From: Monocercomonoides exilis PA203
Lineage: Eukaryota > Protista > Preaxostyla
Assembly (NCBI GenBank): GCA_001643675.2
Contig: LSRY02000058.1
Coordinates: 248,001 to 312,000, forward strand
Length of the DNA stretch: 64,000 bases
Direction: 5' to 3'
The first letter of the stretch is position 1; every line of letters begins with the position of its first letter. The notes under the pieces are model-generated. The model saw only the letters and a program-made list of their open reading frames with translations, was not told the origin of the DNA and did no database searches. Made by a program: the position numbers and the translations under genes. Positions 37,173-44,141 of this stretch are shown piece after piece.

Positions 37173-40100
37173 ATGGATAAATCAGTTTATTCTGTTCTCT
37201 CGCGTATCCAGCAATATGCACAAAACAAATGGCAACAAAATCACATATTTGAAGTTGAAGCGGATCTAGAGAACTATACGCCAAAGACATTCGTTACAAC
37301 ACCAATGCCATATACGGATTCATTAATGTCTCTTAATCGTGGATTTGCACTTGTTATGACCGATATAAATGCAAATTATTCAGCGCTACAAGGAAATAAT
37401 GTTTTGTTTTCTCTTGATTATCATTTTGGTGGAACGAAAATTCAGGTTTTGAAAGAAAAATTTGAAAAACTTTCATGATAATAATTTTTATAATTTAAAG
37501 GCTCGTTCTGATAGGCTCAGAGAAGAAATAAAAGGGAATACACCACTTCCGCCTCAGAGGCTTGTTGAATCTGGAAGGTTATCAGAAGCTATTAGCAAGA
37601 CCGATTCCGCAAAAGTTGATATTGATATCATAACATTGTTGAGAAAATGCGGAGTGAAAAATGAAGATATATCATCTTTCGTTGATCCAAAGCAATGGAT
37701 GGCTCATTTTTCAAAGGTCGGAAAGGTTTGAAAAAATATTGAATCAAAACATTTACCAATAAAAATTTGATTTTTAAATAAAAAATTCAGTTTGACTGCA
37801 TGTCTCTTGGCCTGCGAATCGATTACAGACGTTCTATGAATTTATCCAGTGATAATCCTTTTTTCTGTTCTTTTATAAATTGGCAATATCTTTCACTGTT
37901 TGAGAGGGAAAGAGTATGCAAAAAAGAAAAGCCAATTATTTGGTCAGAATCGATGCAGCAGCCATGTGTAGATCATGACCGCACAAAAGGAGAAGATGCC
38001 TATGCAATGGAGTTTTTGCTAATCACACACAAACTTCTTGACTTCCCTGAGAAAATGGTGGTATATCCATCTGGTTTTGCTTCGACTTTCGACAACGAAG
38101 ATCTTGCATCCTCAGAATCTTCCGAAGAAAACGATACCCACACCCACACACGCACTCATAGCACCTGCTCTCTGCACTCATTCCCACTTGCGAATCTATT
38201 GAAGCGCAAGGGATTCACCATCGATGATCTGCGCAAGCGGGACCTCTTCTGTGTATCAGCCACCTCGCGCCCGGAAGTGCTGTCGAACCAGGCGGGGCTG
38301 TGGGTGCACCCGAACACGCTGCTCTACGGCTACGAGATGCCCGACGGGCGCATCTTCATCTGCACGCGCCACGCCATGCGCAACATCTTCCTCCAGCACT
38401 GCCTGCCTGTGGCTGAGGCCGGGGGCTCGATGGACGACCTCTGCCTCTTCTCAGTGCAGAGCAGAGATTTGGTGGGGCTGCGGGTCGAACCCACGCCGTA
38501 CAACGTGCGCCGCACGACGGCGGTGTTTGTGCTGCCTGGGGAGTTTATCCGGCTGGAGAGAGGGACAGGCTTTGTGGAGGCGTGTGTGGGGGACAACCCT
38601 GATCAGTATGTGGAGTACAGAAGGATGCTCGAGGAAGACAGGCAGCCGAAGGGGAAGACGCTGGCGAAGCGGAGGAAAGGAGTAAGGAGTGAAGGGAGTG
38701 AAAGGAATGAAGAAAAGGAAGGGAAGGAAGGGAAGGAAGGGAAGGAAGGGAAGGAAGGAAAGGAAGGAAAGGAAAGGAATGAGCAGCAGAAGACACAAGA
38801 AGGAGCTTCTTCTATTCATCATCAACAACAACAACCACAACCATCACATCAATCAAAAGCAGACTCCTCAGAAGAGTATGAGTACGTGGAAGTCGATTTC
38901 AACTGGCATTCCCCCGACATCTTCGAGCCATCAGTGCTTGTGCCAGTGAATGAGCAGATTCTCTTCCCTCATCCTTCAGCCACACCCACTCCCATGCCCA
39001 CCCCTTCCGTCACACCCAGTCTCCACCACATCACATCCACACTGACTTCTGTTTCTTCTGTCTCCGCTGTTTCTGCTTCATCTTCTTCTTCTCCTCATTC
39101 ACAGACACCGTTCAACCCTCCTCCTGTCACCACCCCTCAGCCCCAGCAGCTGCAGCTCCCGTCTTCGTCGCTTCCTCATTCCGGCACATCAAATAACAAC
39201 AATAATAACAACAATAATAATATTTCTTCTCCTTCTCCCTCTTTCTCTCCTTCGCCTTCAATGCCTTCTTCTTCTTCTTCTTCCTCTCCATCGCTCACAT
39301 GTCAACCACTTCCACAGCAATCCTCCTCTTTATTCCCTTCATGTTCATCTCCTGCTCCATCATCATCAGCAGCAACATCATCAAATTCTTCTTCTTCTTC
39401 TTCCACTCCCAATTCATTTCATTCACGAGCCACCTCTTCCCTCTCCTTCTCTTCCTCCCCTTGTCCTCCTTCCCCCAACAACTCAACCAACACTCTTCAA
39501 CCTCTTCCTCAATCTTCTCTTCAGTCTCATCCTGCTCCTTCACCTTCCCCTTCCCCTTCCCCCTCACCTTCTCCCTCATCCTCACCCACAACCCCCGCCA
39601 TCGTCGCCACCCTCCTCTCTGCCTATCTTTCCGACCCTTCTTCCCTCCAGACATGCACCTCTGCTTTGTCCAAATGCTGCAAAGATCCCTCCCACCCTAC
39701 AAAACAGGAGATTGAGGCAGCGAAAGAGAGTCTGTTTGCACAGGCACATGCACACGGGGTGGTTGCAGATGGCCCCTTTCAGGGTCTCTTTGTGTCTGAA
39801 GTGCGGGCAGTGGCGAAGCAGCGGCTGAGCGAGGAAGGCGTGGGCATCGTGTATTATGAGCCGAGTAAGACGACGGAGTCTATATTGGGGGATGAATGCT
39901 GTGTGAAGTTATCAAGAGAGTGGGTGCTGACATACGGGGATGAAGAATGGAAGGACAAAGCAATCTTGTGCTTGACACAGACGAACACATTCAGCCCAGA
40001 GGTGCGGCTGCAGCTGAGCAGCGCGATTGGCGCAGCGAAGGACCGGCCGTTCACACACCACTATGGAAACGGATGCCCTCTGCCCATTGAGAAGGAGAAA

Positions 40101-43100: not shown

Positions 43101-44141
43101 TCTCCTTCTCCATCAAACTCTTCTACTGCTGCTACTGCTTCTTCTTTCTCTTCTCTCTCAGCCCAACCAACACCAACAGGCCCCTCTCTTTCTCGTTCTT
43201 CTTCTTCTTCTTCTCAAATCGCCCTGGCAACAACACCTTCAATTTCGCCCTCGCCTTCCGTCTCTTCAACTGCTGCCTTGCTTTCCATCGACTCCTCCAA
43301 GCTTCTTCCTTCCCTGTGCTCTTCTGATCCTTCCTCTGCTGCATTGGAGTCTTCTTTGCATTCACAGGCACACATGTCTCTTTCTGTAGCCACCCCTCTC
43401 AACACTGCCCCATCCACACTCCTTTTCGCGCCTAAACCCTCGCATCTTGGAACAGATACTGCTGGTTCTTCTTCTTCTTCTTCTACTACTACAACTTCTT
43501 CTTCCTCTTCTGCTATACCCAGCCTTGCCCCCTCCGCCGACAGTGAAGCAATAGCTGAGAGAGAGCCAAGCGATGCATCCTATTTGGAATCTCCCTCTCT
43601 CTCCACCAACCCATCCCCTGCGCCTCGCACCCCTTCTGCCTTTGGAATGCCCCCTCTCACATACAACACGTGTGTGATAGTCGTTGCGAATAGCTATTCA
43701 GAGGCACAAAAGAAAGTGCTGGGGGCAATGGAGAGCCTGTGGAACGAGTCGCAGCAGGACTTTTCTCGCAACCTGGCGCCGCAGGTGAAGGCGCTGTTCC
43801 CAGCCATCACAGCAGCCGAGCTGGCGGAGATGATGAAGTTTGTGAACGACATCAGGGGAGAGGCGAACAGGGTGGGCAAGGCAGCATTCAACAGCACCCT
43901 CCCGTTTGTGGAGAGCGATGTGCTCAGGCAGAACAAGCAGTTCATCCTGTCGTGCATTCCGCCCATCCGCCACGTGTTCATCTGCTCTCCAGCTGACCCG
44001 CTGCCTCCGTCGCTGTATGGGGTGTATCCGTTTGTGCCGGAGATCCTCTCAAAAATTGTGCCGGAGAAACCTGTGATTGGGCTGTTCAATTTCGACCAGG
44101 CAGCAATCACGGAATTGCAGAATGCTCAATACACGAAATAA
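37173..44141 (+). CDS. LARS: Eukaryote/archaeal-type leucyl-tRNA synthetase-like protein with degenerate catalytic motifs and large low-complexity insertions; 4 exons, 2,170 aa
   Basis: Exons 37173-37445, 37501-37725, 37791-40740 and 41077-44141 (6,513 nt, in frame). LeuRS landmarks: LGLRIDYRRS, FINWQY, QPCVDHDRTKGE, YYEP...GDECCV, YGDEEWK, IEPLSDSTLYTAMY, EFMYWYPVDLR, LLLSPICPHWAE, AKWP. Confidence 0.85.
40752..40857. repeat. (GA)n microsatellite (~106 bp) in LeuRS-like intron 3
   Basis: Directly visible. It explains the spurious (ER)n tail of the raw ORF. Confidence 0.95.

What the first reader, a model, noticed from the sequence alone, without database searches (positions are those of the whole stretch)
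37173..44141. Intact 2,170-aa LeuRS homologue with both active sites apparently disabled (pseudo-synthetase)
Seen: the spliced frame is unbroken and structural motifs are kept, yet each catalytic signature has changed. PYMNGxLHLGH (HIGH) reads PYTDSLMSLNR (SLNR at 37329-37340). The KMSKS loop reads IDKKDPHMTSRYF (~40480-40520). GKDL reads GKHL (~40374). The editing-site ATLRPET reads ATSRPEV (~38259), and GTGVVTSVPSDSPDD reads GTGFVEACVGDNPDQ, so the editing Asp is Gln (~38604). Known: HIGH and KMSKS are required for adenylate formation in class I synthetases, and that Asp is required for CP1 editing. Cytosolic LeuRS also has non-catalytic roles, including leucine signalling to TORC1. Inference: a paralogue kept for tRNA binding, scaffolding or sensing rather than charging.
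Basis: partly seen in the sequence, partly recalled or inferred. Interest (0 to 1): 0.8.

Follow-up and report, generated by a model that had tools for sequence, protein, structure and literature searches.

The report
Dead leucyl-tRNA synthetase paralogue in an oxymonad
A gut protist without mitochondria (Monocercomonoides exilis) expresses an intact 2,170-residue copy of its leucine-charging enzyme in which the ATP-handling and proofreading residues have been replaced by new, conserved motifs, so it is most likely a retained non-charging "pseudo-enzyme" whose role is unknown.

Summary
The gene has four exons (37173-44141, +) and encodes 2,170 aa. RNA contigs from four runs of one study skip exactly the three predicted introns.

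Alignment to human LARS1 fixes the register:
- HLGH becomes SLNR.
- KMSKS becomes DPHMT.
- GKDL becomes GKHL.
- Editing Asp399 becomes Gln, and Thr298 becomes Val.

A canonical LeuRS with all motifs intact lies elsewhere in the genome (contig C11), so this is not the only LeuRS.

The gene is one of exactly three such paralogues in M. exilis (C56, C77, C16). The scan had already flagged the other two on other DNA. Blattamonas nauphoetae has three more. All six share the same replacement motifs, and the region around the former HIGH site is the best-conserved part of the family.

Between paralogues dS is saturated and dN/dS is about 0.2-0.4. Four of the five leucine-pocket residues named for LARS1 are kept. 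Intron 2 has the same position and phase as an intron of the canonical gene.

The best reading is a selectively retained, non-charging LeuRS-derived protein that acts by binding leucine and/or tRNA. The TORC1/Rag idea gets no support: no Rag GTPase was found. I found no report of this family in the searched literature. It is a new variant of a known kind (pseudo-synthetases).

The parts
37173..37445 (+). Exon 1 (91 codons): N-terminal half of the Rossmann fold, holding the former HIGH site (PYTDSLMSLNR at 37308-37340; SLNR at 37329-37340)
   Evidence: An RNA contig starts at 37168/37175.
37446..37500 (+). Intron 1 (55 nt, GT..AG, phase 0)
   Evidence: The RNA contigs of all four runs skip it. 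C77, C16 and Blattamonas P0001 have an intron at the same position.
37501..37725 (+). Exon 2 (75 codons): variable linker leading up to the CP core
37726..37790 (+). Intron 2 (65 nt, GT..AG, phase 0), at the same aligned position and phase as the canonical LeuRS intron after Met184
37791..40740 (+). Exon 3 (983 codons plus 1 nt): CP core, CP1 editing domain, a disordered insert and the C-terminal half of the catalytic domain
   Evidence: AF2 model: pLDDT above 90 in the conserved blocks. Best structural match is human LRS, E 7e-38.
37794..38057 (+). CP core. The CP-core histidine (human His251) is kept in PCVDHDR at 37962-37982.
38223..38660 (+). CP1 editing-domain homologue with a changed site: T-rich ATSRPEV at 38259-38279 (Thr298 to Val); GTG loop kept; Asp399 to Gln at 38604-38606
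   Evidence: PDB CP1 domains 2wfe/2wfd match at E 2e-14.
38655..39590 (+). Ser/Pro/Asn-rich insert of low complexity, predicted disordered, interrupted by a short folded element (residues 362-392 of exon 3)
   Evidence: pLDDT below 50 at residues 289-361 and 393-600.
39681..40682 (+). C-terminal half of the catalytic domain: leucine-pocket stretch EPLSDST at 40113-40133 (Leu594 and Ser597 kept), GKHL at 40374-40385, former KMSKS = DPHMT at 40494-40508
40741..41076 (+). Intron 3 (336 nt, GT..AG, phase 1), holding a (GA)n microsatellite at about 40752-40858
   Evidence: The RNA contigs join 40740 to 41077 (table 8).
41077..44141 (+). Exon 4 (completes the split codon, then 1,020 codons and TAA): long linker, anticodon-binding domain, second insert and C-terminal domain
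41079..42641 (+). Linker of about 520 residues, low in complexity, with Ser runs, poly-Asp/Glu and an Arg-rich cluster. No Pfam domain.
42642..43004 (+). Anticodon-binding helical domain (Pfam Anticodon_1, E 2.4e-10; aligns to human LARS1)
43665..44138 (+). C-terminal domain, weakly similar to the LARS1 C-terminal / RagD-binding region (PF24810 at 43683-43901, below cut-off). This is the least conserved part of the family.

Best explanation
The gene encodes a LeuRS-derived pseudo-enzyme. It is a duplicate of the eukaryotic cytosolic leucyl-tRNA synthetase that no longer charges tRNA or proofreads, yet has been kept by selection.

Shown:
- It is an expressed, correctly spliced, intact gene.
- It is one of three paralogues in M. 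exilis, and Blattamonas nauphoetae has three relatives.
- The folded LeuRS core (CP core, CP1, catalytic C-terminal half, anticodon-binding domain) is retained, joined by long disordered inserts.
- HIGH, KMSKS, the GKD aspartate and the editing aspartate are replaced in all six proteins, mostly by the same new residues.

Inferred:
- Without both HIGH histidines, the HIGH glycine and both KMSKS lysines it cannot stabilise the transition state for leucyl-adenylate formation.
- Without Asp399 it cannot hold the amino group of a mischarged residue for editing.
- The remodelled synthetic pocket is the most conserved part of the family and keeps four of the five leucine-contacting residues. The protein therefore most likely works by binding something, not by catalysis. 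Candidates are leucine or a related small ligand in the old synthetic pocket, and/or tRNA-Leu through the retained anticodon-binding and C-terminal domains.
- It would then act as a sensor, regulator or scaffold beside the canonical enzyme. The partner and the output are unknown.
For: Homology and fold:
- E 1e-79 to human LARS1.
- leuS_arch profile matches of 194 and 143 bits on the window's own contig; the leuS_bact search listed no match there.
- AF2 model with 447 residues at pLDDT 90 or more; best PDB match is human LRS, E 7e-38.

Catalytic residues lost.

A canonical LeuRS is present elsewhere.

Expression and splicing.

Family:
- Exactly three exon-1 homologues in the genome, with the same motif changes.
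- Blattamonas P0001, P0154 and P0086 carry the same signatures. Among about 330 LeuRS sequences fetched, no other carries two or more of the seven family signatures.

Constraint:
- T42-T43-P44-M45-P46-Y47, D49-S50-L51 and N55-R56 are invariant across the six proteins.
- Segment identity is highest in the former-HIGH exon, at 50-56%.
- dS is 1.6-2.1 (saturated), dN is 0.34-0.75 and dN/dS is 0.16-0.42. About half of the identical residues use different codons.
- Only 58% of the 186 columns that are at least 95% invariant in canonical LeuRS are kept, against 98-99% in the two oxymonad canonical enzymes.

Leucine pocket: Tyr54, His251, Leu594 and Ser597 are kept; Tyr52 is Met in all six.

Origin by duplication:
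- Intron 2 shares position and phase with the canonical gene.
- The six proteins form one clade with support 100.
- A tree that holds this clade together with the oxymonad canonical LeuRS is not rejected (p-AU 0.625).
Against: - No biochemical data exist. Loss of activity is inferred from motifs only.
- The replacement motifs are so well conserved that a changed activity, not just loss of activity, cannot be excluded.
- dN/dS was measured only on alignable blocks with saturated dS, so it is a rough figure.
- RNA evidence comes from one study and from assembled contigs. It shows presence and splicing, not level, and there is no protein-level evidence.
- Leucine-pocket residues might be kept for structural reasons alone.
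- The position of the clade among eukaryotic LeuRS is unresolved because its stem is long (1.5-1.85 changes per site).
Confidence: 0.78

Rival explanations
1. It is a neo-enzyme. The remodelled pocket, with its conserved Asp-Ser-Leu..Asn-Arg stretch and its Gly-Lys/Arg-Asp-x-His-Met-Thr/Ser loop, catalyses a new reaction, or activates leucine or another substrate by a non-canonical route.
For: - The replacement motifs are nearly invariant in six proteins from two genera.
- The former-HIGH exon is the best-conserved segment.
- The pocket-lining residues Tyr54, His251, Leu594 and Ser597 are kept.
Against: - To my knowledge no class I synthetase fold works without both HIGH-type histidines and the KMSKS lysines.
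- Gly62 to Asn should crowd the adenine/ribose site (inference).
- The GKD aspartate is also lost.
- There is no positive evidence for any activity.
Confidence: 0.1
2. It is a LARS1-style leucine sensor that signals to TORC1 through Rag GTPases, as in mammals (via the C-terminal RagD-binding domain) or yeast (via CP1 and Gtr1).
For: - The leucine-pocket residues are largely kept.
- There is a weak PF24810 match in the C-terminal domain.
- A TOR FRB domain is present in the genome.
Against: - The best Gtr1/RagA match in the whole genome is 32 bits and the one I read (the best, on C7) is an Arf-like GTPase.
- PF24810 scores 14.7 bits against a cut-off of 27.
- The C-terminal domain is the least conserved part of the family, at 19-36% identity.
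- The CP1 site is altered.
Confidence: 0.05
3. It is still a working LeuRS isoform whose signature motifs have merely drifted.
For: It has the full LeuRS domain order, is expressed, and carries an anticodon-binding domain.
Against: - All four catalytic signatures are changed at the key residues.
- It keeps only 58% of the canonical invariant columns, against 98-99% for the true enzyme of the same cell.
- It scores 194 and 143 bits on TIGR00395, whose cut-off is 648.5.
Confidence: 0.04
4. It is a decaying pseudogene or an annotation artefact, for example two genes read as one.
For: It has very long low-complexity inserts and lies on a long branch.
Against: - The spliced frame is an unbroken 2,170 codons.
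- RNA contigs join exon 3 to exon 4.
- The same architecture and the positions of introns 1 and 2 are found in Blattamonas.
- dN/dS is well below 1 with saturated dS.
- Three paralogues in each of two genera are all intact.
Confidence: 0.02

Closest known systems
Eukaryotic cytosolic leucyl-tRNA synthetase (human LARS1, PDB 6KID/6LPF; M. exilis canonical enzyme P0203 on contig C11)
   Same: Same fold and domain order: Rossmann halves, CP core, CP1, anticodon-binding domain and C-terminal domain. Both are of the archaeal/eukaryal type. One intron position is shared with the canonical M. exilis gene, and four of the five leucine-pocket residues named for LARS1 are kept.
   Different: HIGH, KMSKS, the GKD Asp, editing Asp399 and Thr298 are replaced. 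Only 58% of canonical invariant columns are kept. The protein is roughly twice as long because of disordered inserts. It scores below the NCBIfam cut-off.
Blattamonas nauphoetae 'putative Leucine--tRNA ligase' KAK2953501.1 (P0001), P0154 and KAK2951337.1 (P0086)
   Same: Same family: the same replacement motifs, the same positions for introns 1 and 2 (P0001), and 40-47% identity over the conserved core. They form one clade with the M. exilis copies (support 100).
   Different: They are shorter (1,760-2,379 aa) and have fewer serine runs. They are machine-annotated as ordinary ligases. One-to-one orthology with the window's gene is not resolved; P0001 and P0154 are a Blattamonas-specific pair.
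LeuRS-I of Sulfolobaceae (Weitzel et al. 2020, as summarised in PMC9437257)
   Same: A second LeuRS copy beside a canonical one that does not aminoacylate, has a disrupted editing domain and a divergent C-terminal domain, and is thought to act outside translation.
   Different: It is archaeal and arose independently. LeuRS-I still forms leucyl-adenylate and binds tRNA-Leu. Here the adenylate-forming motifs themselves are gone.
Haloarchaeal LeuRS2 (Natrialba magadii NmLeuRS2, PMC4005665)
   Same: A duplicated LeuRS within a single compartment.
   Different: NmLeuRS2 keeps some aminoacylation activity, though much less than NmLeuRS1, and is a bacterial/archaeal chimera. It is not a motif-dead protein.
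Other non-charging synthetase relatives: the HisRS-like domain of GCN2, insect SLIMP (SerRS-like), the dead half of the trypanosomatid TyrRS pseudo-dimer (the first two from my own knowledge; the last from PMC9437257)
   Same: A synthetase fold kept for binding or regulation after catalysis was lost.
   Different: They derive from different synthetase families and have different architectures. None derives from cytosolic LeuRS or forms a three-gene family.
Dictyostelium purpureum XP_003287339 (P0096)
   Same: A eukaryotic cytosolic-type LeuRS-like protein with degenerate HIGH (LLSQ) and KMSKS (KMTMQ) motifs.
   Different: It is independent: it falls among canonical eukaryotic LeuRS in the tree. 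It keeps the editing motifs, carries none of the oxymonad signatures and is of normal length (1,027 aa).

Membership tests
Leucine--tRNA ligase, archaeal/eukaryal type (EC 6.1.1.4; NCBIfam TIGR00395) | Homology across the LeuRS domains (Rossmann fold, CP1, anticodon-binding domain) | tested here: met
   phmmer against human LARS1: E 4e-7, 1e-79 and 4e-11 for exons 1, 3 and 4. Foldseek best match is human LRS, E 7e-38.
Leucine--tRNA ligase, archaeal/eukaryal type (EC 6.1.1.4; NCBIfam TIGR00395) | Score over the curated family cut-off (648.5 bits) | tested here: not met
   194.1 and 143.5 bits for the two exon matches. The canonical gene on C11 reaches 668.7 bits.
Leucine--tRNA ligase, archaeal/eukaryal type (EC 6.1.1.4; NCBIfam TIGR00395) | HIGH signature (human His60-His63) | tested here: not met
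   HLGH aligns to SLNR. The Asn and Arg are invariant in all six family members.
Leucine--tRNA ligase, archaeal/eukaryal type (EC 6.1.1.4; NCBIfam TIGR00395) | KMSKS signature (human Lys716-Ser720) | tested here: not met
   KMSKS aligns to DPHMT. 106 of 159 aligned LeuRS hits have exact KMSKS; most of the rest are near variants, shifted registers or fragments.
Leucine--tRNA ligase, archaeal/eukaryal type (EC 6.1.1.4; NCBIfam TIGR00395) | CP1 post-transfer editing residues (Thr293, Thr298, Asp399) | tested here: not met
   Thr293 is kept, Thr298 is Val and Asp399 is Gln. The Gln is invariant in the family.
Leucine--tRNA ligase, archaeal/eukaryal type (EC 6.1.1.4; NCBIfam TIGR00395) | Leucylation of tRNA-Leu | not testable with these tools
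   Needs enzyme assays.
Pseudo-synthetase (non-charging paralogue kept beside a canonical enzyme) | A canonical enzyme of the same specificity is present in the same compartment | tested here: met
   P0203 on contig C11 has all motifs. The organism is reported to lack mitochondria, so no organellar LeuRS is needed.
Pseudo-synthetase (non-charging paralogue kept beside a canonical enzyme) | Expressed and under purifying selection | tested here: met
   Spliced RNA contigs. dN/dS is 0.16-0.42 with saturated dS. The family is conserved in a second genus.
Pseudo-synthetase (non-charging paralogue kept beside a canonical enzyme) | Demonstrated lack of aminoacylation | not testable with these tools
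   Inferred from motif loss only.
LARS1-type leucine sensor upstream of TORC1 | RagD-binding domain (Pfam PF24810) | tested here: not met
   14.7 bits, E 0.034, against a cut-off of 27. In the genome-wide search, 19.8 bits, E 0.06.
LARS1-type leucine sensor upstream of TORC1 | A Rag/Gtr GTPase partner encoded in the genome | tested here: not met
   The best PF04670 match is 32 bits, and that match is an Arf-like GTPase. The six-frame search can miss genes split by introns, so this is not proof of absence.
LARS1-type leucine sensor upstream of TORC1 | Leucine-binding pocket residues (Tyr52, Tyr54, His251, Leu594, Ser597) | tested here: inconclusive
   Four of the five are kept and Tyr52 is Met. 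Binding itself was not tested.

The most novel reading that the evidence does not exclude
The former synthetic site is rebuilt, not dead. Its replacement residues are almost invariant across six paralogues in two oxymonad genera, while most of the leucine pocket is kept. These proteins could therefore be a new class of LeuRS-fold ligand sensors, for example a Rag-independent leucine sensor in a lineage that has TOR but no detectable Rag GTPases. Alternatively they could be enzymes with a new chemistry.
Probability: 0.15. Interest if true: 0.85.

Novelty: new variant of a known kind. Interest (0 to 1): 0.6.

Why it matters
Non-charging relatives of tRNA synthetases are a recurring source of regulators; GCN2's HisRS-like domain, SLIMP and archaeal LeuRS-I are examples.

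I found no report of a family derived from eukaryotic cytosolic LeuRS in which both catalytic sites are replaced. Here three intact, very large copies sit beside one working enzyme in each of two oxymonads, and the old active site is the most conserved part.

That gives a clear experimental question: what does a LeuRS pocket bind once it can no longer use ATP? It also flags six database entries, named or likely to be named "leucine--tRNA ligase", that should not be counted as charging enzymes when translation machinery is inventoried in these amitochondriate protists.

Tried and rejected
- **Long-paralogue search.** A word-based protein search with the 3,154-aa C16 open frame (region 1-450) returned nothing, probably because low-complexity words swamped the candidate list. 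I therefore could not see how the three M. exilis proteins are annotated in public databases.
- **Metagenome scan.** A scan of JGI metagenome contigs with the former-HIGH exon alignment gave 132 pattern matches but no tblastn-confirmed relative. The known distribution stays at two genera.
- One search failed on a frame slip and was corrected. One search returned no answer and was repeated.
- **Placing the clade.** Both quick trees leave the clade's position among eukaryotic LeuRS unresolved, and neither careful search finished in time. The AU test only shows that a sister relation to the oxymonad canonical LeuRS is not rejected.
- **dN/dS.** dS is saturated in every paralogue pair and infinite in two comparisons, so the ratios are only rough.
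- **Origin from mitochondrial LeuRS.** Rejected. The gene matches the archaeal/eukaryal profile; the bacterial-type profile search listed no match on the window's contig.
- **Rag-dependent TORC1 signalling.** Considered and downgraded.
- **Literature.** Six searches found no paper on oxymonad LeuRS paralogues.
- **Joined protein not searched.** Every search used single exons by reference. In scripts, the exon translations were aligned separately to a canonical LeuRS profile and shown on one line per gene. They were strung together once, only to count amino-acid composition.
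Full report
**Organism and setting**

I confirmed this. The canonical LeuRS open frame on contig C11 is 100% identical to the NCBI protein "putative leucyl-tRNA synthetase [Monocercomonoides exilis]", which sits on a contig of the same length, 1,647,472 bases. The assembly has 82.3 Mb in 101 contigs, and the window is C56:248001-312000.

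**Checking the observation**

Reading the sequence gives a four-exon gene on the + strand:
- Exon 1: 37173-37445.
- Exon 2: 37501-37725.
- Exon 3: 37791-40740.
- Exon 4: 41077-44141.

All three introns have GT..AG ends.

Four metatranscriptome runs from one study hold 92% of the sampled words of the stretch. Their contigs skip exactly the three introns, with no mismatches. The gene is therefore transcribed and spliced as modelled. These are assembled contigs from one study, so they show presence and splicing, not expression level.

The register is fixed by phmmer alignments to human LARS1 chains, combined with the residue numbers in the LARS1 structure paper PMC7229842:
- HIGH (His60-His63) reads SLNR.
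- KMSKS (Lys716-Ser720) reads DPHMT.
- GKDL reads GKHL.
- In the editing site Thr293 is kept, Thr298 is Val and Asp399 is Gln. Asp399 is the residue that salt-bridges the amino group of the mischarged residue.

**What else is in the genome**

A profile search of the whole assembly finds a canonical cytosolic LeuRS on contig C11. It scores 668.7 bits on TIGR00395 against a cut-off of 648.5. Its HLGH, ATLRPET, GTG-loop Asp, GKDL and KMSKS motifs are all intact. The window's gene is therefore not the only LeuRS. It matches the archaeal/eukaryal profile; the bacterial-type profile search listed no match on its contig. That rules out descent from a lost mitochondrial LeuRS.

Two more degenerate copies exist:
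- One on contig C77.
- One on contig C16, with a single open frame of 3,154 codons.

A search with exon 1 finds exactly these three loci in the genome. The scan had already flagged the other two on other DNA, and my reading of those loci agrees with those notes.

**Relatives elsewhere**

I ran a full HMMER pass over 1.84 billion representative proteins with the C-terminal half of the catalytic domain.
- One hit stands clearly above all canonical LeuRS: 311 bits and 47% identity, against at most 190 bits and about 32%.
- A second, multi-stretch hit also belongs to the family.
- Both are Blattamonas nauphoetae proteins annotated "putative Leucine--tRNA ligase". A third Blattamonas member appeared in a follow-up search.

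Nearly all the others keep KMSKS or a near variant. A scan of JGI metagenome contigs found no further relative.

**Evidence of constraint**

- *Conserved replacements.* In an alignment of the six exon-1 regions, the stretch that replaces HIGH is the most conserved part. Thr42-Thr43-Pro44-Met45-Pro46-Tyr47, Asp49-Ser50-Leu51 and Asn55-Arg56 are invariant. The loop that replaces KMSKS is likewise conserved in five of the six.
- *By segment.* Identity of the window's protein to its family members is 50-56% in the former-HIGH exon. It is 40-56% in the CP core and 19-36% in the C-terminal domain.
- *Codons.* Between the M. exilis paralogues synonymous sites are saturated (dS 1.6-2.1 or uncomputable). 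dN is 0.34-0.75 and dN/dS is 0.16-0.42. About half of the identical residues are encoded by different codons.
- *Loss of canonical constraint.* Of 186 alignment columns that are at least 95% invariant in 24 canonical eukaryotic LeuRS, the window's protein keeps 58%. The canonical oxymonad enzymes keep 98-99%.

The gene is thus under selection, but not for the canonical job.

**Structure**

An AlphaFold2 model of exon 3, built with a 50-sequence alignment, has 447 residues at pLDDT 90 or more in the conserved blocks. These blocks are the CP core, CP1, a short element and the catalytic C-terminal half. Residues 107-131, 289-361 and 393-600 are below pLDDT 50 and coincide with the low-complexity inserts. 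The best solved-structure match is human cytoplasmic LRS (E 7e-38), followed by Pyrococcus horikoshii LeuRS.

Exon 4 holds, in order:
- a linker of about 520 residues with no recognised domain;
- an anticodon-binding domain (Pfam E 2.4e-10);
- a second insert;
- a C-terminal domain only faintly like that of LARS1.

**Origin**

- The six degenerate proteins form one clade with support 100 on a long stem of 1.5-1.85 changes per site. C77 pairs with Blattamonas P0086, and P0001 with P0154.
- The clade's position relative to canonical eukaryotic LeuRS is unresolved. A tree that holds it together with the oxymonad canonical enzymes has a slightly better likelihood than the free tree and is not rejected (p-AU 0.625).
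- Intron 2 of the window's gene lies at the same aligned position and phase as the intron after Met184 of the canonical M. exilis gene.
- Introns 1 and 2 are at the same positions in C77, C16 and Blattamonas P0001.

Together this points to duplication of the nuclear cytosolic LeuRS gene before Monocercomonoides and Blattamonas diverged, followed by further duplications.

**How it most likely works**

The HIGH histidines and glycine and the KMSKS lysines are what class I synthetases use to bind ATP and stabilise the transition state. Asp399 is needed for CP1 editing. Loss of all of them, in all six proteins, makes charging and proofreading very unlikely. This is an inference from established enzymology, not a measurement.

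The residues that PMC7229842 names as forming the leucine pocket are mostly retained. Tyr54, His251, Leu594 and Ser597 are kept, and Tyr52 is Met in all six. The surrounding replaced motifs are under strong constraint.

I therefore favour a protein that binds but does not catalyse: leucine or a related ligand in the old pocket, and/or tRNA-Leu through the retained helical and C-terminal domains. It would act as a sensor, regulator or scaffold.

The mammalian route from LARS1 to TORC1 is not supported here:
- A TOR FRB domain exists.
- The best Rag/Gtr match is a 32-bit hit, and that match is an Arf-like GTPase.
- The RagD-binding-domain match is below cut-off.
- The C-terminal domain is the least conserved part of the family.

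A rebuilt pocket with a new activity cannot be excluded. That is the most novel reading left open.

**Comparison with known systems**

The nearest described cases are archaeal.
- LeuRS-I of Sulfolobaceae binds tRNA-Leu and makes leucyl-adenylate but does not aminoacylate.
- Haloarchaeal LeuRS2 has much weaker activity than its partner.

Both still have a working or partly working synthetic site. Here that site is replaced.

Other dead synthetase folds (the HisRS-like domain of GCN2, SLIMP, the trypanosomatid TyrRS pseudo-dimer) come from other families. In passing I found an independent degenerate LeuRS-like protein in Dictyostelium purpureum that keeps its editing motifs.

Six literature searches found no paper on oxymonad LeuRS paralogues. 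The Preaxostyla genome paper mentions tRNA synthetases only in another context.

**Limits**

I could therefore not look up the annotated M. exilis protein by exact sequence.
- One protein search was wasted on low-complexity words.

**Verdict**

This is a real, expressed, conserved pseudo-synthetase. It is one of a six-member oxymonad family, and its function is unknown.

Noticed in passing
window 40752-40858: A (GA)n microsatellite of about 100 bp lies inside intron 3 and is spliced out. Read in frame it would give a long Glu-Arg run, which is why the raw ORF list extends exon 3 to 40898.
   Followed up: yes
P0096 (Dictyostelium purpureum XP_003287339.1, 1,027 aa): An independent LeuRS-like protein of the eukaryotic cytosolic type. 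Its HIGH is degenerate (LLSQ), its KMSKS reads KMTMQ and GKDL reads SSAL, but its editing motifs (T-rich region, GTG loop and the Asp) look intact. It may be a paralogue that only edits or only binds.
   Followed up: partly
G000:C57:219909-220199 (-), L033: A TOR-type FRB domain (59.5 bits) lies inside an open frame of 5,713 codons. No convincing Rag/Gtr GTPase was found in the genome (best match 32 bits, an Arf-like protein on C7).
   Followed up: partly
window 46741-48159 (+) and 49516-50911 (-): Two neighbouring genes in opposite orientation encode related proteins. They share N-terminal blocks and an acidic C-terminal stretch (Glu/Asp/Gly-rich, then a Lys-Val-Phe-Glu-Lys-Met motif). This looks like a local inverted duplication of an unidentified gene family.
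   Followed up: no
window 1-18000: The first 18 kb have higher G+C (0.40-0.46) and a strongly negative GC skew (-0.15 to -0.46). The rest of the window does not show this.
   Followed up: no
window 42168-42584: Within the exon 4 linker, poly-Asp/Glu runs flank an Arg-rich cluster. This could be a nuclear-localisation or RNA-binding patch. It is not obviously conserved in the paralogues.
   Followed up: no
G000:C11:1201900-1205900 (-), L023: The canonical LeuRS (P0203, 1,354 aa) also carries Ser-rich and Lys/Glu-rich inserts in its C-terminal part. It has an intron inside the codons just before the HIGH motif that the degenerate paralogues lack.
   Followed up: partly
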